A stretch of 63,784 nucleotides of DNA, filler included, from Octopus bimaculoides (taxonomy: Eukaryota): assembly GCF_001194135.2 (NCBI RefSeq). It is 5 parts of 4 records of this genome, joined end to end, with 100 filler letters (N's around TTAATTAATTAA, not from the genome) between each part and the next. Parts side by side here need not be neighbours in the genome. Positions count along the whole stretch, not along the records: positions 28,856 to 40,800 come from NC_068988.1; 4 more parts are not named here. One strand, 5' to 3'. This document shows positions 27,791-40,900 of the stretch, piece after piece. Each line of letters begins with the position of its first letter. The first letter of the stretch is position 1. The notes under the pieces are model-generated. The model saw nothing but the letters and a program-made list of their open reading frames with translations, did not search any database and had not been told where the DNA came from. The translations under genes were made by a program, and so were the position numbers.

Positions 27791-28394
27791 AAGATTGTGT
27801 ATATATATATATATATAAGAAAATGGAGAGGATACAAAAATGACATACATCAAGTGGTAGACATTCTGGTATGTCCATTTATTCCAAAGTATTAGAAGAA
27901 TACATACACATGTAACAATATTACAGAAAGGAGCAAAAGATCAGATTGTCAGAAGGTACTAAGTTCCTTACAGCCATATAAATATNNNNNNNNNNNNNNN
28001 NNNNNNNNNNNNNNNNNNNNNNNNNNNNNNNNNNNNNNNNNNNNNNNNNNNNNNNNNNNNNNNNNNNNNNNNNNNNNNNNNNNNNNNNNNNNNNNNNNNN
28101 NNNNNNNNNNNNNNNNNNNNNNNNNNNNNNNNNNNNNNNNNNNNNNNNNNNNNNNNNNNNNNNNNNNNNNNNNNNNNNNNNNNNNNNNNNNNNNNNNNNN
28201 NNNNNNNNNNNNNNNNNNNNNNNNNNNNNNNNNNNNNNNNNNNNNNNNNNNNNNNNNNNNNNNNNNNNNNNNNNNNNNNNNNNNNNNNNNNNNNNNNNNN
28301 NNNNNNNNNNNNNNNGTTTTACATATTAGGTTGGCTTCGAAACGTTCCCTTTTGTCGCGGGCGACTGTTGAGCGTTGTATTATGTTGCTTATAG

Positions 28395-28855: not shown

Positions 28856-28895
<40 letters not shown>

Positions 28896-29037
28896 CAAAT
28901 GGAGGGAGATACAGAGAGAGATATGAAGAAAGCTAGATAGATATACATAAAGATATATAGACAGATTGACTATAGATACACGCACACAGACACACACACA
29001 TGTATATATATATTTATTTGAGTGTGTGTGTTTGTGA

Positions 29038-29848
29038 AGTCTGATCCGGATTGTTGTCATAGTAATGAAGCAAAAGCACACAGAGTAAAACCGGTTGTGA
29101 AATATTGACCTTGAACTCTGCTGTACATACACACTAAGTGTTAATGCTCTAGCCTACTTCTGCTGTTTACAGCAGTGCTTTGAAGGAACGTGTGTAGCGT
29201 GTGATCGTCGCATTGGCCATGACAGAGAAAGTTGCCGTGACGATACCTGCTCAGACGCATACGCAACGTTGCAGAAATTGTATGGAGAGGAGTGTATGAG
29301 ACGTACACAAGTGTACGAGTGGTTCAGACGTTTCCAAGATGGCTGAAAAATATCGATATTGACGATCGTTCTGGGAGACCCACATCCAGCAGAACTGAGA
29401 TGTACAGATTAGTTCAGTCCATTATCACTGAATATTTCGGTATGAGATGCGTTTCTGCCAACATTGTGCCAAAACTGCTTTCAGCTGGCCAAAAATAAAA
29501 AAAAAAAATACGGGTTTCAGTTGCACAAAATTTCCTTGATTGTGTCAAGAATGATGAAAACTTTAAAAATACTTTTCAAAGGTCTTTGAGCAGGTATCAC
29601 CAAGCTTTTGGCAAAATTTGATGTAGATTCTCTGCTCAATTTTCTCTCTCATGGTCAACACGACGACCACACGCAACACACGTTCCTTTCAAGCACTGTA
29701 ATAAGCAGCGGAAGTGAGCTAGAGCGTTAAAATGTAGTATACATGCGCAGCAGCATTCAAGGTCAAACTGTGTCCAGCATCTTCACTTGGCGTGCTTTAA
29801 CTTCGTTACTATGGCAACAGTCTGGATTCTTATTGATCAGACCACGTA
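29038..29848. mobile_element. Two convergent mariner 5' ends forming a foldback element
   Basis: Left copy (+): ATG at 29219 and an HTH-type N-terminus YGEECMRRTQVYEWFRRFQDG...DDRSGRPTS...MRCVSANIVPKLL. Right copy (-): TIR TACGTGGTCTGATCAATAAG ending at 29848 and ATG at 29652 (MREKIEQRIYIKFCQKLGDTCS). The inverted arms are about 200 bp. Confidence 0.85.
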
Positions 29849-30000
29849 TGTCCGTGTATAAGATGTCTGGTAATATATAGACATTCTTATCATCACTGAA
29901 TAGAAGAAAAGCAGAAAAAGAAGGAGGAAGAGGAGAAAAATAATAAGAAGAGGAGGAGATGGAGGAAGAAGAAACGAAGGAATGAAAGAAAGAAATCAGC

Positions 30001-30300
30001 TATTAGGGACTATAGAATAACCCAAAAAGCTATTAGGGACTATAGAATAACCCAAAAAGCTATTAGGGACTATAAAATAACCCCAAAAGCTATTAGGGAC
30101 TATAGAATAACCCAAAAAGCTATTTGGGACTATAGAATAACCCCAAAAGCTACTAGGGACTATAGAATAACCCAAAAAGCTATTAGGGACTATAGAATAA
30201 CCCAAAAAACTATTAGGGACTATAGAATAACCCAAAAAGCTATTAGGGACTATAGAATAACCCAAAAAGCTATTAGGGACTATAGAATAACCCAAAAAGC
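30001..30300. repeat. 30-bp minisatellite, 10 copies
   Basis: Unit tattagggactatagaataacccaaaaagc with only scattered substitutions; no spacers. Confidence 0.97.
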
Positions 30301-30447
30301 ATTTGTCAATAAAAAATGGCGTCTTCCAAAATTTCTGTTAACGAGACTAGTTATTGCTATTGAAGTTCTTCAAGTGTCGTTCAATTGTGTCCTAAAAATA
30401 AGGCCATTGCTTAGACTGGACAATAGTGCGTCCATGTGAATAGTTTT

Positions 30448-30654
30448 CTAAGCCCTCACTCCAACATACTGCATTTCGGGAATAAGAGAAGACTTACGAT
30501 CAATTGTAGCTAATTCCCAGGACGAACACAAAGATTGAGTGAGTGAGAGAATGATGGAATGAATCAGAGATCGGTACAAAACAGTTGTCATAGTGAAATT
30601 TTTCTCATAGTGAAATCTTCCAAAGATGGAAGCTTTTGGTTCATTATGTAACGT
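30448..30654 (-). CDS. Candidate terminal exon for the GRL locus (68 codons, phase 0)
   Basis: An AG at 30656-30655 is followed by an open frame TLHNEPKASIFGRFHYEKNFTMTTVLYRSLIHSIILSLTQ...* that loosely resembles the GRL L...P...S.FG.F...K.F..T region before TM7. It lacks the TY...QF motif and the usual post-TM6 helix, so the call is tentative. Confidence 0.25.
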   Translation of the reverse strand, partial: TLHNEPKASIFGRFHYEKNFTMTTVLYRSLIHSIILSLTQSLCSSWELATIDRKSSLIPEMQYVGVRA

Positions 30655-30857
30655 CTATCTTATTTCTACAAATGGGAAACAAAAGTGGCATTACGGCCAT
30701 CGTAGTGTAAGATATTAGGTAAAGAATAAACGATTACATATTCTATTCATACATTAACGAATGTCCAAATTCTGTATCTTTTATGATGTAATACATATAA
30801 TAAAGGTACTTATAAAAAGCAGACGAGAGAATGCTATAAAATAATTATATTACTTAC

Positions 30858-31811
30858 CGATTTATTTAAGCGAACTCCAATCCAAACAATTACGATCAAA
30901 TACATAAGGTTAAGGGATGTCACAATAGTAACACAGATGTATCTATAGTTTACGGTTTTTAATGAATCATTTATAATTCCGTAAGTTGTAATACAACATC
31001 CAGTAATACTACTAAGTACGATAATTCCCGAAGACAACTGAAATGATTCATTTACTAATTTCAATATTGTACTCAGAGTATCATGTGTGTTACATATTTC
31101 AGTAATTTCTTTATATTTCTTAAAGAAATACGAAGTGTCTGATTGCTTTTCTTCTACGTATCTCTGGGCCTTACTCGCTAGTTTATTAAACTCATAAAGC
31201 AGTGCCGTCCCAATTGTAATATTCATATACCAATCAAAAAACGAGAATGCAATTGATATGCCATTGAGTAAAGCCTGTACAATTATCATTGATATGCGAT
31301 AAGGATTGCTGATTATTACAGCAATTCGTAAGCCAGTTCGAAATTTTTTAGTGGAAAAAGGTAGAACGAGATTGATAAGAAGATGACAAAGAACAGGCAA
31401 TGATATTGTTATGTAACGTAGGATATAAGAAAACAGTAAGTTATAATTATAGAATGTTCTATCATCTTCTTCAATTTTAAGTTTGGTGAATGCTTCAATG
31501 ATTTCTTTGTCTTTAGATTTTCTGAAGAGTTTGATCAGACAGTAGAGTGTAACGAAACATTGGTTGAATATTCTGTACAAAAATACAACTATTTCATCAG
31601 TTGATTCGAGACCAAATTGTTTGCCATTGACAATGATTTGAATTGGGATGACAATCAAAATTACACAATACACGAGATAAAAACCATAAAAACAGATTGT
31701 TTTAAATTTGAGTGACCTTAGTGATGTTATATTCGTAAGTGATATCCCAACGATGTTAATTTTCTGATAATATTCCAGTATTTTATAAAAATGTGTTTCT
31801 TTTAGTTCCAT
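30858..31811 (-). CDS. Gustatory-receptor-like (GRL/7TMIC) protein, paralog 1, large first coding exon (318 aa, TM1-TM6)
   Basis: ATG at 31811 and an open frame with six hydrophobic segments. A long amphipathic loop between TM4 and TM5 ends in THDTLSTILKLVNESF, resembling the GR-family H..L...v..lN..F pattern. TM6 ends VWIGVRLNKS, followed directly by a GTAAGT donor (30857-30852, phase 0). It aligns along its full length with paralog 2. Family assignment is by motif and topology recognition; no search was run. Confidence 0.8.
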
Positions 31812-32150
31812 AGTTCTCTGTGATTGTGTATTCTTCGCAAATTACTTCTATATGAGCTAAAATCGCTGACATAAACCAGAGCAGGTTAACTTCTTGTAAT
31901 ATTTCAAGTTCATCAAATTTACTATTACACTATGATGCACTGCTCGTTTGTCACGAAAGTTCTGACAATAAGGATGAGACGGGATGAAGATGTTATATAC
32001 CGTCTTAGGCTTTGTTTGCAGGTATTATCTCAAATCTTTTATTATAGATTTTATGTGAATATTAACTAAAATATCGTTCAGTAAGCTCCTTAAAAAAGAT
32101 CAACCACTTATGTTCATAAGAACATGCGCATAGGAACATGAATATACTTA

Positions 32151-32190
<40 letters not shown>

Positions 32191-33369
32191 NNNNNNNNNN
32201 NNNNNNNNNNNNNNNNNNNNNNNNNNNNNNNNNNNNNNNNNNNNNNNNNNNNNNNNNNNNNNNNNNNNNNNNNNNNNNNNNNNNNNNNNNNNNNNNNNNN
32301 NNNNNNNNNNNNNNNNNNNNNNNNNNNNNNNNNNNNNNNNNNNNNNNNNNNNNNNNNNNNNNNNNNNNNNNNNNNNNNNNNNNNNNNNNNNNNNNNNNNN
32401 NNNNNNNNNNNNNNNNNNNNNNNNNNNNNNNNNNNNNNNNNNNNNNNNNNNNNNNNNNNNNNNNNNNNNNNNNNNNNNNNNNNNNNNNNNNNNNNNNNNN
32501 NNNNNNNNNNNNNNNNNNNNNNNNNNNNNNNNNNNNNNNNNNNNNNNNNNNNNNNNNNNNNNNNNNNNNNNNNNNNNNNNNNNNNNNNNNNNNNNNNNNN
32601 NNNNNNNNNNNNNNNNNNNNNNNNNNNNNNNNNNNNNNNNNNNNNNNNNNNNNNNNNNNNNNNNNNNNNNNNNNNNNNNNNNNNNNNNNNNNNNNNNNNN
32701 NNNNNNNNNNNNNNNNNNNNNNNNNNNNNNNNNNNNNNNNNNNNNNNNNNNNNNNNNNNNNNNNNNNNNNNNNNNNNNNNNTATATATACATATATATAT
32801 ATATGCATACACAAATCAATTTGGTGACAATATTTGATATAGTAAAAACTAATTGATATCTATACACCATCGATATTCCTCTTAGCGGATTTGCGAAAAT
32901 CGAGTGAGCAGCAAAATAGATCCTATATAAACATATGTATATATACGTTATGTAGAATATCGACGTATATTGTTATCAATAAGCTTGCATTATATCAAGC
33001 ATTGTTACCAAATTGTCTTTTGTAAATCGATTAAAGGGACTTACTAACTTTGCCGCATGAAGGAGCATTTCTTTTTGTTTCTAATGAATATATTAGTGTA
33101 AATGCTGATGTAAACGACGATGATAATAAGAGATAGTTTATTAGGTCGTAACCTAAAGCTGGATGCGCAGGGGTGTGTCCGAGTACGTGTCTATATATGC
33201 ATATAACCGTGTGATTGTTTATATATATTCGTTTTGCAAGATTCTTGATGTAAATTGGAGTGTTGAAACTGATAGTATTGTATTTGGGGATGGCCATGTT
33301 GCCAGTTTAGCCAATAAAAACATACACACTATATATTTGGTGTTCACTTGCTTCAGCTTTATTTTATAT

Positions 33370-34005
33370 TAATTGTATTTCGGCCAGAGTTCTTTCGTCA
33401 CACATCTGTGACCTCATCAGTGGTCCTTTGCTTTCTTCTTTCTTTTTTTGTGTTTCTTCCCTTACTAATGATCAGCCATTTTGTTTTCCTATTGTATGTG
33501 TCTTTATTTGCGCATGCGTATACCCATGTGTGTGTTTGTTTAGTGTGTGTGTGTAGGGGGAATGTGACTCTATTATCAGTATCCTCTGTTTATACACGTT
33601 CGTTTAATTTGTTTTTATTTATTTTGTTCATGTGTTTATACCTACTTATTATTTTTTAATTCTTTCTTTTTTTGTATTTAATTTAATTTAATTTGGTTAA
33701 CGTATATAGTTAATTAATTCCATTTGTTTACCTGTGTATTGTATTCTATTTTGTTCATATTGTTATCAGTTTATGGGGATCACATTCTGTCATAGGTTGT
33801 GGTGTGTTGGGGGGTGGTGCTAGTGTTCCATTCCAGTTTCCTATTCAGGTTAGNNNNNNNNNNTGGGAGGTGGTGCTAGTGTTCCATTCCAGTTTCCTAT
33901 TCAGGTTAGGTTTATCTTCTATTATGTGTGTAGCTTCTGTAATTTGTCTAAGCGTCGCGTCTGTTCTATGCGTGGACAAGATTTTAACTTCTATGTTGTT
34001 GAGTC
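33370..34005 (-). mobile_element. Penelope-like element 3' fragment (GIY-YIG endonuclease C-terminus, 3' UTR, hammerhead)
   Basis: Minus-strand translation LNNIEVKILSTHRTDATLRQITEATHIIEDKPNLNRKLEWNT resembles PLE GIY-YIG C-termini. It is followed by an AT-rich UTR and a hammerhead motif, and truncated upstream by a SINE. Confidence 0.65.
33382..33426 (-). ncRNA. Hammerhead ribozyme motif at the 3' end of a Penelope-like element
   Basis: Minus strand reads GGACCA-CTGATGA-G-GTCAC-agatgt-GTGAC-GAAA-G-aa-CT-C-TGGCC. Stem II is a perfect 5 bp, stem I has one bulge, and stem III is minimal. Confidence 0.6.
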
Positions 34006-34014
34006 AGTCCCCGT

Positions 34015-34120
34015 GTTCCTGCTCGGCGTGCTGGTACAGAACCGACGAACTCTTCTCTTCCTTAAGATACTTGCCCCCGCTACCACGCAGTGGGACTGAA
34101 CCCGGAACAAGGTTGCGACA
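34015..34120 (-). mobile_element. SINE family A head fragment
   Basis: ccacgcagtgggactgaacccggaac is the reverse complement of the family A B-box region. Confidence 0.6.
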
Positions 34121-34246
34121 GCATATCCATAGGAATAGTATTCTCACCCTTCGCCAAATCCATCTGCATTCTTGGGATTAACGAAAGTTGGTGTTGAAAC
34201 TTCACCACACATCTAATGACAAATTGTAGCAATCTCCCAGAAACTG

Positions 34247-34332
<86 letters not shown>

Positions 34333-35065
34333 TAAGTGAGCAAGGGAGAAAGAAAGAGAATGAGGAAAAAATAAGATTCGTCCAGCATTTAATGGAGATT
34401 TTATTTTTCCACCTAAAATATGATAAATGCTAAGTTAAATAGATAGATAGATAGGGAGAGGGAGATAGAAAGACAGATAGATAGATCGATATATATATAT
34501 ATATATATANNNNNNNNNNNNNNNNNNNNNNNNNNNNNNNNNNNNNNNNNNNNNNNNNNNNNNNNNNNNNNNNNNNNNNNNNNNNNNNNNNNNNNNNNNN
34601 NNNNNNNNNNNNNNNNNNNNNNNNNNNNNNNNATATGGAGAGAGAGAGATAGACAGGGAGAGGGAGAGAGAGAGAGAGATTGAGTGAGATTGCTCGATAG
34701 ATAGATAAACAGATAGAGGGAGAGTGAGTGAGAGATAAAAAAAGAGAGAGAGATAAATAGAGAGAGAAGTCAGACAGACAGACAGAGGGAGAGAAATAAA
34801 GAAATAAAGAAATAAAGAAAGTAAGAAAGACAGAAAGAGAGTGGGGAAGGAATAGGATTCGTTCAATGTTTAACGGGGATTTTATTTTTCCACCTGACAA
34901 AAAAAAAAGAAAAAGATAAATGCTAAGTTGAACACCGGAGCGATTTTGATATCATCATTGAGAAACGGAACAAAAATATGTCACCTTCTTTATAAGGAAA
35001 TAACTATTATAAACATACGGAAGTTATGAAATAATTGAATTATATAAACACATGAAATAACTTAC

Positions 35066-36055
35066 CGATTTGTTTAAACAAATTCCTCTCCAAACCATTA
35101 TGATCACAAAAGTCAGGAAACAACATACCAGAATTGAAACATAAATGTAACTATAGAATGTATTTTTAAACGAACCATTTATAATTCCGTACGTTGCTAT
35201 ACAGCATCCAAGAATACCCATGAGTACCATAAATCCTGATCCCAGCTTTGTTGATTCATTTACTAATTTCAGTATTCTACTCAGAGAATCATGTGTATTA
35301 CATATTTCTGTAATATCTTTATAGTTTTTAACGAAATACAAAGTATCTGATTGCTTTTCTTCGACATACTTCTGAGCTTCACTCGCTACTTTGTTAAACT
35401 CATAAATAAGTGTTGTTTCCATGACAAGGTCTATGTACCAATCAATTACTATGAAGGTTAATGATATACAATTGAATAAAGCCTGTAACGTTAAAACTGG
35501 CCAGTGGTACGGATTGTTGATTGGTACAGGATATGTTAAGAAATTGCGCAAACTGGCACTAAAAAACGGAAGAGCATGATCAATAATGAGGTAAATAATG
35601 ACCGATAAGATCACAGTTATGTATAGTGCTTTATAGGAGTATGTAAAGTGACTATTATAGAATTTTCTATCTTCTATACTTGTAAGTTGGTTGAATGCTT
35701 CAACTAATTGTTTGTCATTAGATTCACAGAAGATTTCAGTTAAACAACCGATAGAAAGGAAGCTTTGGAAAAAAATGATATAAATATATACAAATAATTC
35801 ATCAGGTGAGATACCTTCCAGTTGTGTTATACCGACAATGCAGCGAATGGGGTTTACGATCAAATATAAGCAAAACAATAAATAAAAGCCATAAAAACAA
35901 ATGGTTTTAAATTGCGGTGGTTTCAGTTGTGATATATTTATAATTGATTTTCTGATAATATTCATTTTCCGATAAAATTCCATCATTTTTATGAATTGCG
36001 TTTCATTTGATTTCCTATTTTCTCCAATTTCGTCACCTTCAAAAATAGACGGCAT
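35066..36055 (-). CDS. Gustatory-receptor-like (GRL/7TMIC) protein, paralog 2, large first coding exon (330 aa, TM1-TM6)
   Basis: ATG at 36055 (MPSIFEG...). Shares FKTICFYGFYL, YEFNK.AS.AQ.YVEEKQSDT, ITEICNTHD.LS.ILKLVNES, GCCI.TYGIIN and VW.G..LNKS with paralog 1. The same TCG|GTAAGT phase-0 donor occurs at 35065. Confidence 0.8.
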
Positions 36056-36869
36056 ATCGACCACAGATATCGGTGAAATAGAAGACGCGAGATTTTTCTT
36101 TTTCTTTTTTTTCCCCTTTTTTTGTCCTTTGTAAAGCTATTAAATCTTCTACGTGGTTTAGTGTGCTTGATTGTTATACTAGTTATATAATCCGTTATAC
36201 TAAACGACTTTCTAACTAATGTAGTAATTATGAACGCTTCGTATGTATTGGCCTAGTATTCTATACGTGTGTGTTTCATGGAAAGAATTGAGACATTCAT
36301 TTTCAGTTTTCAAAGAATCTCATAAATTTACACTGGTATATGGATGTTAAGCGGTTTGTATATGAGCGTAATATGTGATGTTTTATATCTGTAGAATATC
36401 TCCTTTACATATAAAAATGACATACATGTTTCGACACAAGTAAACTGGTTCTGCTCTAATGTGCAATGTAATTGTCAACTGAATCTGTAGCAGCCCGTGT
36501 TTTTATATAAGCTCAATCATGCTATCAGTATTAGTTTTCCTTTGAAGCCACATTGATTTCTTCTGAGTCAATTAGTTCGTCCCTATTGCGTAGGCTTCAG
36601 CTAGTTTCTCTTACATAAAGCCTTAATTCAAAATGTATCCTAGTGTCTTATATAAGCAAATAAATATATTATTGTTGTATCATACACATGTTTAACTTTC
36701 TCATCAACATATTCGCTTATATTGAAACGGCAAGAATAATCAATACGCAATCGTTAATTTAACAACGGGAATGCTCTCGTTCGTTACTTTAAATTGGACA
36801 GGAATATGAAACATGTATGGGTGTGGCTATGTGTGTGTGTGTGTGTTTACATCTGTATGCATATACGTA

Positions 36870-37060
36870 TCTTTTGTCTTTTAGTTGTTTCATTCTGTAG
36901 CCTATGGCCATGCTGGGGCACCGCCTTGAATTTGTAGTCGAATGAATCAATCTCAGTTCTTATTTTGTAAGCCTGGTACTTATTCTATCGGTCTTTTTGC
37001 CGAACTGTTAAGTTACGTGGATGCAAACACACGAACACCAGTTGTTACGTGGTAATGGGA
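36870..37060 (-). mobile_element. SINE family A tail (copy 1 of local duplication)
   Basis: ggccatgctggggcaccgccttgaa...ggtacttattctatcggtctttttgccgaac. Confidence 0.8.
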
Positions 37061-37211
37061 AAAACAAACACAGACACAAACACACACACACACACACACA
37101 NNNNNNNNNNNNNNNNNNNNNNNNNNNNNNNNNNNNNNNNNNNNNNNNNNNNNNNNNNNNNNNNNNNNNNNNNNNNNNNNNNNNNNNNNNNNNNNNNNNN
37201 NNNNNNNNNNN

Positions 37212-37254
<43 letters not shown>

Positions 37255-38554
37255 TACGATGGTCTTCTTACAACATATGCATATGTACATATACATATAT
37301 ATATACTTAGGTTATGGTAGATGAGTTCAGCAAAAATTTAGATTCGAGTGAATATGGTACTTAAGTTTAGGCACCAGAATTTAGTACAGTATTATCCATA
37401 CCAATTTCAAAGTAAGGTGATTAAAATCAAAATAAGCATCAAGGATATCCAGTACGACCGTTTCATGCAACTCCATTTAATTCAACAATGTAATGATTAA
37501 ATCAATTTAAAATGCAGGGCAATCTTCAGCTGCACAATGAGATAGAATTTAAATTAGAACAGATGGACACATTAGTATAATGATACCTAAAATCTCCCAG
37601 AGGTTAGGGAAACAGACAGAGAACATCTTGCTTTAGTCACACCATGGAAGCTAATAAATAAAATGTCAAAGAAGATTCTGCCTGTCACTGATATTTTTTG
37701 TTTTTTTTTTAGTTTAGATTTATAGACTATCATATCAAAAACTTGTATATCTAAAGCTTAACAGAATAAAGGGCATTATCTATTAGGGGTAGGGGTGATA
37801 GAGCAGACAGAAGTCATAAACTCATGAGGTTTGGTAAAGGAAAACTTAAGGAAAACTTAAAACAAGATGTTAGCTGACAACTAAGGGGTCACCCACCCAC
37901 TAGCAGACTATTGATAATGAAACAGGGGAAGTCCTATCATGTAGTACTATAGTTAACAGTATTAAAACAATGTTGCTATACTAGCTAAAATCAATAAAAG
38001 ACTGATGTCTAGTATCAGTTAAAAGAATATTAAATTATGGAACATTCAACATTTTACACTAATCTTTCCATATATAAATTAAGGGATTATTTTATAGGTT
38101 TAAGAGTTAAAGAAGTTATTAGTTTTACTCCTTACATGGAATTTACAGTTTCTTGGTAGAACTTGTTTAAAAGGGTTATTTATATAAAGGCTTATATAAA
38201 ATACTAGGACAAGGAGGGTAGAGCCATTTAAGAAAGAGAAAAATCAAGTAACCTCCAAAGATCATTTAAAAACTATATTGTCTTATTGTACAGAGTTAAA
38301 ATTCAGGATAATCAAGAAGATTATTAATATTGAAATTTTAACAAAATGATAAAATAAAACTTCTATGAATATTAAGAGTATATACGAAAATATTTTTTTA
38401 CCACAATGGAGGGAGGAAAATGAAATAGTTTAATATTTACTTACTTATTACCTATCTAAATATTAACTTGTTATATGATTACTATAAAGATTGTTCAATT
38501 GGATTTGGCCATGTGTGTGTGTGTCTCTCTCTACATCTGTATGCATATACGCAT

Positions 38555-38745
38555 CTTTTATCTTTTAGTTGTTTCATTCTGTAGCCTATGGCCATGCTGG
38601 GGCACCGCCTTGAATTTGTAGTCGAATGAATCAATCTCAGTTCTTATTTTGTAAGCCTGGTACTTATTCTATCGGTCTTTTTTGCCGAACTGTTAAGTTA
38701 CGCGGACGCAAACACACGAACACCGGTTGTTACGTGGTAATGGGA
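38555..38745 (-). mobile_element. SINE family A tail (copy 2 of local duplication)
   Basis: Nearly identical to 36870-37060, including non-SINE flank. Confidence 0.8.
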
Positions 38746-39183
38746 AAAACAGACATAGACACACACACACACACACACACANNNNNNNNNNNNNNNNNNN
38801 NNNNNNNNNNNNNNNNNNNNNNNNNNNNNNNNNNNNNNNNNNNNNNNNNNNNNNNNNNNNNNNNNNNNNNNNNNNNNNNNNNNNNNNNNNNNNNNNNNNN
38901 NNNNNNNNNNNNNNNNNNNNNNNNNNNNNNNNNNNNNNNNNNNNNNNNNNNNNNNNNNNNNNNNNNNNNNNNNNNNNNNNNNNNNNNNNNNNNNNNNNNN
39001 NNNNNNNNNNNNNNNNNNNNNNNNNNNNNNNNNNNNNNNNNNNNNNNNNNNNNNNNNNNNNNNNNNNNNNNNNNNNNNNNNNNNNNNNNNNNNNNNNNNN
39101 NNNNNNNNNNNNNNNNNNNNNNNNNNNNNNNNNNNNNNNNNNNNNNNNNNNNNNNNNNNNNNNNNNTATATATATATATATAT

Positions 39184-40186
39184 CTGTAAATAATATGTGA
39201 CAATTATTCGGTAGCCATGATAAAACTCCAAGTTTCGAATATCGGGGCGAAACTCACGCCCCCATCTCTTCGCCATCGAAAAAATGCTATGAAAATGACA
39301 ATGGGAAATTACTGTGTGATTGACCGTTATTAAGACAAAAGAGCTATTATTAGACTGACCGCTAAGTGAGGGGAGGGAGTAAAGGTAAGGGAGTAAAAAT
39401 GTCTATAGTATTTGCGTAAGCCCACCAGTCCATACATACACATACGCGCCCGCACACCCTCGTAAATGCACCTATATGTATATACTCATCCACCCTCACT
39501 TGAAACACACACATGTTCACCCACACATTCGCCAAAAAATATATACATAACCGCATACACGCTCGCACACACACACGCGCAGATAAAAGGTTCATACACA
39601 CGTCTATATACGCACATGCACAAGTAAAAACAGGGCTAGAGGCAAAATACAAAAAAAAAAATGTAAAAATAGCAATAAGAGTAAAACACGTCTATATACG
39701 CTCATACCCGCACACACGCCCACATCCACAATCGCGCACAAAAGGTCACATATACACGTCTATATACGCACAGGAAAAATGGAAGGTGGAAGGTAGAATA
39801 CAGAAAAATATGTGTAAAAAATATATGAGCAATAAACCTATAAAACAATATCTCTATAAATATGCAAAAAATATTTAAAATATATAAGAAATATAAGTAA
39901 AAAGTATAGAGAGATAAAAAGCTTGTACGTGGACACAATATAGAAAGCAAGTCCTATCTGTAATCTCGAGGGAGAGGCAAAAACGTAACAAATATTTAGT
40001 CACATGTGGATATGATCCGAAAAGTTCAGTTCTTGAATTTAGACATGTGGCGGGGTCTAAGCTGCTTTTGCAGATGAGCAATCTTTCCACGTCATAAAGG
40101 CCGCACTTTCCGCTGCCGTTGGTGTAGGGCTTACACTTGGCTAAGATCTTCCAATGGATGTTGTAACTGACAGCTTTGTCTTTTAA
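39184..40186 (-). mobile_element. Penelope-like element 3' fragment (GIY-YIG C-terminus, UTR, degenerate hammerhead)
   Basis: 39985-40186 translates LKDKAVSYNIHWKILAKCKPYTNGSGKCGLYDVERLLICKSSLDPATCLNSRTELFGSYPHVTKYLL. This matches the WKI....PY......C.LC..E.......LN.R.E....C.H..K.LL pattern of PLE endonuclease ends. Confidence 0.75.
39217..39276 (-). ncRNA. Degenerate hammerhead motif, same family as 18232-18290
   Basis: Minus strand reads GCGAAGA-gat-GGGGCG...CGCCCC-gatattc-GAAAC-ttgga-GTT-ttatcatggctaccgaataattgtcacatattat. The 3' tail matches 18287-18320. The core CTGA is mutated to GCGA. Confidence 0.45.
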
Positions 40187-40189
40187 GGG

Positions 40190-40257
40190 CCACTACGCCA
40201 TATGCCCGTGGGATTATGGCGTAGTGGTTAAGAGCGCGGGTTACTAACCCCAAGATT
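40190..40257 (+). mobile_element. tRNA-derived SINE head, truncated by a gap, preceded by an inverted copy of its start
   Basis: TATGGCGTAGTGGTTAAGAGCGCGGGTTACTAACCCCAAGATT (A box and anticodon-arm-like region); CCACTACGCCATA at 40190-40202 is its reverse complement. Confidence 0.6.
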
Positions 40258-40299
40258 NNNNNNNNNNCACACACACACACACACATATATATATATACA

Positions 40300-40779
40300 T
40301 ATTTAATGATGGACCAACCGAGATTAAAAAACGTGATAATTGTATACCTTGAATTTGAAAATACGCAACCCAGACAGGTGAATAAAAATGGCCCAATTTT
40401 GCTCCACGACAATGCACGTCCTCACACTCATCAAGCTACGGTCCAAAAGTTGCAGAGCCCAAATTATGAGATTTTGCCACCACCTCCATATTCCCCTGAT
40501 TTGTCTCCTATTGATCATCAGTTATTTAAGCATTTTGAGCTTTTCATAAGCAATAAAACATTCTTAAATAGAGAAGAGGTAATTGAAGCATTAGGGCAGT
40601 TTATCACAACAAAAGATGAATTTTTATTAAAGATGGAATATATGACACAGAGAAGCGTTGGGCAAACGTCATAAATGAACGTGGATCATAACTTGATCAA
40701 ATAAATCAGTTCTCTAACACTTCTCACACTTTTATTATTACCTTTCAAATACGACATTTCATGTGAAACAACCTAATAT
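40300..40779 (+). mobile_element. Mariner transposase C-terminal fragment with 3' TIR
   Basis: PILLHDNARPH...KLQ..YEILPPPPYSPDLSPIDHQLFKHFELF. Ends tttcatgtgaaacaacctaata followed by TA. Confidence 0.9.
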
Positions 40780-40900
40780 ATATATATATATATATATATA
40801 NNNNNNNNNNNNNNNNNNNNNNNNNNNNNNNNNNNNNNNNNNNNTTAATTAATTAANNNNNNNNNNNNNNNNNNNNNNNNNNNNNNNNNNNNNNNNNNNN

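What the first reader, a model, noticed from the sequence alone, without database searches (positions are those of the whole stretch)
30448..35066. Both GRL exons stop at the same donor, with no private TM7 exon visible: possible variable-exon/shared-3'-exon locus
Seen: both ORFs end AAA TCG|GTAAGT at the same codon (LNKS), so the apparent ORF tails VSNIIIL and VSYFM... are likely intron read-through. Between paralog 2 and paralog 1 I found no phase-0 exon encoding a TM7-like segment homologous to anything after paralog 1. The only candidate is 30654-30448. Established: Drosophila Gr28b and Gr39a splice alternative large 5' exons to shared C-terminal exons, and TM7 forms the pore in this family. 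Inference: the same architecture may have arisen independently here, giving isoforms with different ligand-binding halves and one common pore helix. Caveat: N gaps at 32191-32781, 34510-34632 and 27986-28315 could hide private exons.
Basis: partly seen in the sequence, partly recalled or inferred. Interest (0 to 1): 0.75.

Follow-up and report, generated by a model that had tools for sequence, protein, structure and literature searches.

The report
Octopus taste-receptor-like alternative first exons
Two neighbouring octopus exons each encode the first six membrane helices of an insect-type taste-receptor-like channel and lack their own seventh helix; related octopus loci show such exons lined up in arrays that share one distant set of three small end exons, the layout known from the fly gene Gr39a.

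Summary
Two minus-strand exons (36055-35066 and 31811-30858, 52% identical, six TM helices each) end at the same codon on AAA TCG|GTAAGT. No TM7 exon is present in the readable piece. The gaps do not hide exons. In the collinear, gap-free O. vulgaris locus the two large gaps correspond to microsatellite. That locus holds orthologues of both exons, at least seven more large exons, and no tail exon in 73 kb. In three paralogous clusters, 2, 6 and 8 large exons (O. sinensis) and 5 (O. bimaculoides) precede a single tail of three phase-0 exons (69, 90 and about 57 nt) ending TYILVVIQTK. NCBI isoform models join different large exons to that one tail. Full-length relatives pass Pfam 7tm_7, and a model matches only insect GR/OR structures. 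The shared-3'-exon reading is therefore well supported for the family. For this locus it is inferred, because the tail lies beyond the piece. It is the Drosophila Gr39a layout in a cephalopod. I found no paper describing it, although it is implicit in the NCBI models.

The parts
35066..36055 (-). Large alternative 5' exon 'par2'. The CDS probably starts at ATG 36055 (the tool's ORF starts at GTG 36064). It encodes about 330 aa with six TM helices and ends ...LNKS.
   Evidence: ORF; six TM segments; family profile hit E = 5e-174; O. vulgaris orthologue 79.6% aa identical; dN/dS 0.51.
35060..35065 (-). Phase-0 5' splice donor GTAAGT of par2.
   Evidence: Sequence. The same position and sequence class occurs in about 24 family exons.
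30858..31811 (-). Large alternative 5' exon 'par1'. It starts at ATG 31811, encodes 318 aa with six TM helices and ends ...LNKS.
   Evidence: E = 9e-161; O. vulgaris orthologue 80.8% aa identical; dN/dS 0.63.
30852..30857 (-). Phase-0 5' splice donor GTAAGT of par1.
31812..35059 (-). Interval between the two large exons. It would be intronic for a transcript that starts at par2. It holds microsatellites, three assembly gaps and repeats, and no tail exon.
   Evidence: tblastn and HMM searches negative. Collinear with O. vulgaris L007 14337-19921, which is gap-free and also negative.
28856..30851 (-). Sequence downstream of par1 to the piece edge: intron-like, with no tail exon.
   Evidence: In O. 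vulgaris the next family element after the par1 orthologue is another large exon about 9 kb downstream, which is beyond this piece.

Best explanation
The window comes from an octopus, at about the O. bimaculoides distance from O. vulgaris. It shows the first two units of a tandem array of alternative large 5' exons of a gustatory-receptor-like (GRL, 7TM ion channel) gene. Each large exon has its own ATG, encodes the N-terminus to TM6 (the ligand-binding part) and ends in a phase-0 GTAAGT donor. None has its own C-terminus. Proposed mechanism (inferred): transcription starts just upstream of one large exon. Its cap-proximal donor is joined to the first available acceptor, at the start of a single distal block of three small phase-0 exons. 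Those exons encode the TM6-TM7 loop and TM7 with the TYxxxxxQ pore motif. Any large exons in between lack acceptors and are removed as intron. One locus thus gives many receptors with different sensing halves and one common pore and assembly helix, as in Drosophila Gr39a and Gr28b. Shown here: the exon anatomy, the conserved donor, the absence of private tails here and in the gap-free orthologue, and the many-exons-to-one-tail layout with isoform models in paralogous clusters. Inferred: that par1 and par2 use such a tail (it lies outside the piece and beyond the 73 kb of O. vulgaris sequence I could fetch), and that exon choice is made by promoter choice.
For: Anatomy. The donor is conserved at the same codon in about 24 exons. 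Family identity: spliced relatives pass the Pfam 7tm_7 gathering score (P0022 31.7, P0024 30.3, P0009 27.4 bits against a cut-off of 26.6). An AF2 model of P0025 (pLDDT 78, pTM 0.76) has insect Gr64a, Gr43a, BmGr9, ORs and Orco as its top 19 PDB matches, all at probability 1.00 and TM 0.46-0.64. The tail consists of three phase-0 exons with Py-tract/AG acceptors. Each tail exon is found once per cluster at E <= 1e-12 and nowhere in the window or the O. vulgaris orthologue. Cluster maps: O. sinensis LOC118764607 has 8 large exons and one tail over 87 kb; LOC118764608 has 6 large exons and one tail; LOC118764606 has 2 and one tail; O. bimaculoides LOC106880719 has 5 and one tail. NCBI isoforms join different large exons to the same tail (P0025, P0026 and P0015; P0030/P0027 versus P0009/P0024). 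One search lists a second CDS of LOC118764607 running from inside large exon 2 (25887) to the same tail end (97209). Orthology and gaps. Both window exons are intact. dN/dS is 0.51 for par2 (my chi-square on the counts gives p of about 0.002) and 0.63 for par1. ORFs have been kept open across dS = 0.71 between the paralogues.
Against: No tail exon was found for this particular array. The piece ends 2 kb after par1, and 73 kb of O. vulgaris sequence (at least 9 large exons) still shows none. I have no transcript evidence for par1 or par2. No annotated protein contains them and no RNA-derived spliced contig turned up. The NCBI isoforms are Gnomon predictions whose RNA support I could not inspect. 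Constraint on the exons is only moderate. The O. vulgaris par1 orthologue has a stop at codon 33, and 4 of 9 units there are damaged, so some units are dying.
Confidence: 0.8

Rival explanations
1. The two large exons are decaying or silent duplicates: orphan exons in an array that has lost, or never had, a usable tail. They make no receptor.
For: No tail was seen for this array in 73 kb of the orthologue. There is no annotated or assembled transcript containing them. The O. vulgaris par1 orthologue carries a premature stop and several neighbouring units are fragments. dN/dS of 0.5-0.6 is only moderately below 1.
Against: Both window exons keep 318-330 codon ORFs, ATGs, all family-invariant residues and perfect GTAAGT donors. 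For par2, dN/dS is significantly below 1. Five of nine O. vulgaris units are intact. Birth-and-death turnover of single exons is also normal at the functional Gr39a locus (PMC2204066).
Confidence: 0.12
2. Each large exon is the first exon of its own ordinary gene, and its private TM7 exons are hidden in the assembly gaps.
For: Three gaps lie between the exons. The 591-N gap could in principle hold small exons.
Against: The O. vulgaris orthologue is gap-free, collinear on both sides of each large gap, and holds only microsatellite there. The tail-exon HMMs find nothing anywhere in that locus. In every mapped cluster the tail is single-copy.
Confidence: 0.03
3. The transcripts are unspliced, and the products are six-TM proteins that end at the read-through stops.
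For: The ORFs do reach stops 7 and 13 codons after the donor. Automatic gene callers report such ORFs (P0001-P0008).
Against: The read-through tails are not conserved beyond the GTAAGT-encoded 'VS'. The donor consensus is conserved in all units. Family membership and the fold require TM7, which forms the pore. The relatives' gene models are spliced exactly there.
Confidence: 0.03

Closest known systems
Drosophila Gr39a (also Gr28b and Gr23a): alternatively spliced gustatory receptor loci
   Same: The layout matches. Gr39a has several large exons, each with its own start codon, six TM domains and a 5' donor. The first acceptor appears only at a block of three small constitutive exons that encode TM7 and the C-terminus. 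Large exons are gained, lost and pseudogenised individually (PMC2204066). The octopus clusters match on six TM per large exon, three small phase-0 tail exons and exon turnover.
   Different: The phylum differs (Mollusca, a GRL lineage) and the large exons are cephalopod-specific duplicates (40-60% identical to each other, 11-15% to insect receptors). The arrays are larger and longer: 8 exons over 87 kb, and at least 9 over more than 60 kb, against 4-5 exons in a few kb. Splicing and expression are demonstrated in the fly but only modelled or inferred here.
Clustered protocadherin and UGT1A loci of vertebrates (variable first exons with constant exons)
   Same: A tandem array of large variable first exons is spliced to a short shared set of 3' exons. 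Intervening variable exons are removed as intron. Each variable exon may have its own proximal promoter element: the motif CGTGTT[CT]A[ATC]CT lies 50-55 nt upstream of 10 of 23 ATGs.
   Different: The protein family is unrelated. Promoter choice, the role of the conserved motif and one-exon-per-cell expression are untested here.
NCBI Gnomon models LOC118764606, LOC118764607 and LOC118764608 (O. sinensis) and LOC106880719 (O. bimaculoides)
   Same: Same gene family and the same architecture. The isoforms already link different large exons to one tail.
   Different: These are paralogous clusters, not this array. par1 and par2 are at most 52% identical to any exon in them. The proteins are named 'uncharacterized protein', most large exons in the clusters are not in any listed model, and I found no paper describing them.

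Membership tests
GR/GRL (insect-type 7TM ion channel, Pfam 7tm_7 PF08395) | Match to the 7tm_7 profile above the gathering score | tested here: inconclusive
   The window exons alone give no Pfam hit. Spliced relatives of the same family pass: P0022 31.7, P0024 30.3 and P0009 27.4 bits against a cut-off of 26.6. P0028 scores 25.1, just below. The window exons hit the family profile at E = 1e-160 to 1e-174, so membership is by transitivity.
GR/GRL (insect-type 7TM ion channel, Pfam 7tm_7 PF08395) | Seven TM helices with the insect OR/GR fold | tested here: met
   There are six TM segments in each window exon and a seventh in the relatives' tail. The AF2 model of full-length P0025 (pLDDT 78) has GR/OR/Orco structures as its top 19 PDB matches and nothing else at high probability. 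This was tested on a relative, not on a window protein. The intracellular position of the N-terminus was not tested.
GR/GRL (insect-type 7TM ion channel, Pfam 7tm_7 PF08395) | Three phase-0 introns near the 3' end, the last at TM7 (criterion quoted in PMC5203786) | tested here: met
   In four clusters the junctions large exon|E2, E2|E3 and E3|E4 are all phase 0, and E4 starts at the beginning of TM7 (MIGSFITY...). In the window only the first of these introns (the donor) is visible.
GR/GRL (insect-type 7TM ion channel, Pfam 7tm_7 PF08395) | TM7 motif (T/S)Yhhhhh(Q/K/E)(F/L/M) (PMC7746228) | tested here: inconclusive
   The relatives' tails read TYILVVIQT or TYVIVVLQT, so three of four positions fit and the last is T rather than F/L/M. 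The tail of the window's own array was not available.
Gr39a/Gr28b-type alternatively spliced chemoreceptor locus | Two or more tandem large exons, each with its own ATG, six TM and a 5' donor, and none with a private C-terminal exon | tested here: met
   Window. Gap-free orthologue.
Gr39a/Gr28b-type alternatively spliced chemoreceptor locus | A single downstream block of small constitutive exons encoding TM7, carrying the first acceptor | tested here: inconclusive
   Met in four paralogous clusters. Not found for this array within the piece or within 73 kb of the O. vulgaris orthologue.
Gr39a/Gr28b-type alternatively spliced chemoreceptor locus | Transcripts that join each large exon to the common exons | not testable with these tools
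   Only NCBI predicted isoforms of paralogous clusters are available. I had no RNA-seq junction data.

The most novel reading that the evidence does not exclude
Cephalopod GRL genes are organised as protocadherin-like variable-exon arrays of up to 8-9 or more exons over 60-90 kb. Each variable exon carries a conserved proximal promoter element (CGTGTTYAWCT about 52 nt before the ATG). This would allow one-exon-per-neuron promoter choice and so a combinatorial chemoreceptor code from a few loci. It would be a second, so far unstudied ionotropic chemosensory system in octopus alongside the nicotinic-like chemotactile receptors.
Probability: 0.15. Interest if true: 0.75.

Novelty: new member of a known kind. 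Interest (0 to 1): 0.5.

Why it matters
If confirmed by transcripts, this shows that the Gr39a/Gr28b way of diversifying a chemoreceptor has been used on a larger scale in a mollusc. That way is to duplicate only the large exon that encodes the sensing half and keep one pore-forming tail. The ancestral GR gene structure (one large exon plus three small phase-0 exons) probably makes this easy. It also means that counts of octopus GRL genes from annotation underestimate receptor diversity. Four annotated loci hold 21 large exons, and the O. vulgaris array holds at least 9 more. Finally, it points to an unstudied receptor family for cephalopod chemosensation.

Tried and rejected
1. Pfam on the window exons alone gave no hit. 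The first AF2 model of par2 from 5 sequences was too poor to use (pLDDT 57).
2. An exact look-up of the par2 ORF and of P0028 found nothing on record.
3. A DNA comparison of the two units found homology only in the large exon plus about 28 nt of intron. A short resemblance I saw by eye at about 34230 and 30510 was not significant.
5. Searches mixed the coordinates of L007 and L008 because both sit in one file. I briefly read them as showing that the window exons lie inside LOC118764606. This was wrong and was corrected.
6. Megablast of the O. vulgaris array against the O. sinensis and O. bimaculoides clusters found only transposon matches, so the array is not the upstream part of any cluster I fetched.
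8. A profile search of PDB sequences found nothing.
9. Literature searches found no description of octopus GRL arrays.
10. A global alignment of upstream regions was weak; only the short motif stands out.
Full report
**What is in the window**

On the minus strand of the piece (28856-40800) there are two long ORFs, 36064..35024 and 31811..30834. They are paralogues, 52% identical over 317 aa with E = 3e-111. Each contains six hydrophobic TM-length segments.

Both run ...AAA TCG and then GTAAGT. The donor G is at 35065 and 30857, so the short tails VSYFMCLYNSIIS* and VSNIIIL* are read-through of a phase-0 intron. The upstream exon most likely starts at ATG 36055, since the tool's start at 36064 is a GTG.

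DNA similarity between the two units stops about 28 nt after the donor.

**The gaps**

No ORF or exon crosses a gap. I found the orthologous, gap-free locus in Octopus vulgaris (L007 and L009, OX597821.1:107,179,322-107,253,054, reverse strand). It is collinear with the window in blocks of 77-89% identity on both sides of each large gap.

- Gap 34510-34632 corresponds to about 8 nt within an (ATCT)n run.
- Gap 32191-32781 corresponds to about 315 nt of (TA)n/(TATG)n.
- Gap 33854-33863 is flanked by a duplicated block of about 41 nt, which looks like two unmerged contig ends.

The gaps hide simple repeats, not exons.

**What the family is**

The window exons alone hit no Pfam model and the family is small. 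A full HMMER scan of 1.84 billion representative proteins found 23 members. Most are short genomic contigs whose called ORFs read through the same GTAAGT.

A few are spliced NCBI models from O. sinensis (LOC118764606, -607, -608) and O. bimaculoides (LOC106880719). These continue after the conserved ...LN(K/R)S with a tail of about 71 aa, for example VHSITQSIHYMQFQGVDQEVVAK | ILVFLNRLTTESHGIDVGGCFVITPSSTLT | MIGSFITYILVVIQTKPL.

Evidence that this is a GRL family:
- The spliced proteins pass the 7tm_7 gathering score: P0022 31.7, P0024 30.3 and P0009 27.4 bits against a cut-off of 26.6.
- An AlphaFold model of P0025 (pLDDT 78, pTM 0.76) has Gr64a, Gr43a, BmGr9, several ORs and Orco as its 19 best PDB matches. 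All are at probability 1.00, and nothing else comes close.
- The tail is split by phase-0 introns, the family's hallmark (PMC5203786).

The GRL call therefore holds for the family. The window exons belong to it at E = 1e-160 to 1e-174 against the family profile.

**No private tail here**

- tblastn with the real tails against the piece gives nothing better than E = 1.8.
- HMMs of the three tail exons find each exon once per tail-bearing cluster at E <= 1e-12. Outside those clusters the best hit is E = 0.25, and none of the top hits is a window fragment.

Against O. vulgaris it is 92% identical, like the surrounding intron (94%) and the coding exon (90.5%). It contains a 17-nt indel that breaks any frame. 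It is not an exon.

**Architecture in relatives**

| Locus | Species and gene | Large exons (same strand) | Tail |
|---|---|---|---|
| L011 | O. sinensis LOC118764607, 87 kb | 8, plus two inverted fragments | one (91120-91188, 95070-95159, 97153-97209) |
| L006 | O. sinensis LOC118764608 | 6 | one |
| L008 | O. sinensis LOC118764606 | 2 | one |
| L010 | O. bimaculoides LOC106880719 | 5 | one, plus an inverted copy in a very gappy region |

The tail is always three phase-0 exons (69 nt, 90 nt, and 54-63 nt plus stop) with pyrimidine-tract/AG acceptors. All large exons end at the same codon with a GT(A/G)AGT or GTATGT donor.

NCBI isoforms join different large exons to the same tail:
- In LOC118764608, three different large exons (at 10001, 17145 and 28302 of L006) are used by isoforms X1, X2 and X3.
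- In LOC118764607, exon 1 is used by X1/X2 and exon 2 by X3/X4.
- The gene table lists a CDS running from 25887, inside exon 2, to the common end at 97209.

A further contig from an unidentified ENA assembly (L012) shows three divergent large exons in tandem with no tail within 10 kb.

**The window's own array**

In O. vulgaris the par2 orthologue (79.6% aa) and the par1 orthologue (80.8% aa) lie in the same order. They are followed on the same strand by at least seven further large exons, some broken. No tail exon occurs in the 73 kb I could fetch.

No same-strand large exon lies in the 13 kb upstream of the par2 orthologue, or upstream of par2 in the window. par2 may therefore be the first unit of the array.

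The next unit after par1 is about 9 kb downstream in O. vulgaris. The window piece, which ends 2 kb after par1, could not have shown it. The array matches none of the fetched clusters, so it is a fourth cluster whose tail I did not reach.

**Are the exons alive?**

- Both window exons are intact. Against O. vulgaris, dN/dS is 0.51 for par2 and 0.63 for par1.
- From the counts, my chi-square gives p of about 0.002 for par2 and about 0.06 for par1.
- The paralogues have kept open frames across dS = 0.71.
- The O. vulgaris par1 orthologue has a stop at codon 33, and four of nine units there are damaged.
- One O. bimaculoides exon has four co-orthologues in O. sinensis.

This is birth-and-death turnover of single exons, as described for Gr39a (PMC2204066).

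By contrast the tails of clusters 607 and 608 are 91.5% identical in protein but only 75% at third codon positions. The constant part is under much stronger constraint than the variable part.

**Most likely mechanism**

I put confidence at about 0.8 that the two window exons are alternative first coding exons. Each would be transcribed from its own start and spliced from its cap-proximal donor to the first acceptor, at a distal shared three-exon tail that supplies TM7. The rivals are silent or decaying orphan exons (0.12), private tails hidden in gaps (0.03) and unspliced six-TM products (0.03).

**Comparison with what is known**

[quoted passage not shown] The octopus clusters have the same layout in the same superfamily. 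They were built from cephalopod-specific exon duplications and are larger.

The architecture is implicit in the NCBI isoform models. I found no paper that describes octopus GRLs or their arrays. I file it as a new member of a known kind.

**Limits**

I had no RNA data. The tail of this array was not seen. The species of the window is inferred only from divergence: orthologous DNA of O. bimaculoides and O. sinensis is 84-90% identical, the same range as the window against O. vulgaris.

Noticed in passing
L006, L007, L009, L010 and L011, 50-55 nt upstream of large-exon ATGs; degenerate copy at window 31854-31865 (-): The motif CGTGTT[CT]A[ATC]CT occurs 11 times on the gene strand in about 395 kb. 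Ten of these lie 50-55 nt upstream of a large-exon ATG, where 0.08 would be expected. The ten come from two exon subfamilies that are only about 40% identical in protein. It is a possible exon-proximal promoter element. par1 has a 9/12 match (CGATTTTAGCTC).
   Followed up: partly
L007 20074-20076 (O. vulgaris orthologue of par1): There is an in-frame stop at codon 33 of the O. vulgaris par1 orthologue, while the window copy is intact. Four of the nine units in that array are truncated or frameshifted.
   Followed up: partly
window 33805-33910: The 10-N gap at 33854-33863 is flanked by a nearly identical block of about 41 nt on each side. This is probably overlapping contig ends that were not merged, or else a real tandem duplication.
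   Followed up: partly
window 29998-30300: A minisatellite with a 30-nt unit (AGCTATTAGGGACTATAGAATAACCCAAAA), 10.1 copies and 95% matches. The corresponding O. vulgaris region (L007 21503-21804) aligns to its flank.
   Followed up: partly
window 40306-40674 (+) and about 29216-29500 (+): Transposase remnants. ORF 40306-40674 matches DDE_3 (E = 5e-6, 26.8 bits, just under the cut-off). The stretch near 29216-29500 reads like a mariner-type N-terminus with stops; this is by eye, and Pfam was negative on the 68-aa ORF.
   Followed up: partly
window 36870-37100 and 38554-38781: Two copies of a repeat of about 230 nt, probably a SINE. Each abuts a (CA)n run and an assembly gap. Several copies at 69-76% identity occur in the O. 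vulgaris locus.
   Followed up: no
L011 91120-91188, and E2 of L010: NCBI isoforms X2/X4 of LOC118764607 and X2 of LOC106880719 lack the first 14 codons of tail exon E2 (VHSIT.SIH.MQFQ). This implies an alternative acceptor 42 nt inside E2, after ...TTT CAG.
   Followed up: no
L010 50545-52821 (-) versus 56105-59271 (+): The O. bimaculoides cluster shows an inverted second copy of the three tail exons, in a locus with 23.6 kb of N. It may be an assembly artefact or a real inverted duplication.
   Followed up: no
L007 1385-2335 (-): A very divergent family member (23% identity to P0002) lies on the opposite strand, 11 kb upstream of the par2 orthologue. It may be the start of a head-to-head neighbouring array.
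   Followed up: no
L006 versus L011 tail exons: The tails of two paralogous clusters are 91.5% identical in protein but 75% at third codon positions, while their large exons are 40-50% identical. The constant pore and anchor part is far more constrained than the variable part.
   Followed up: partly
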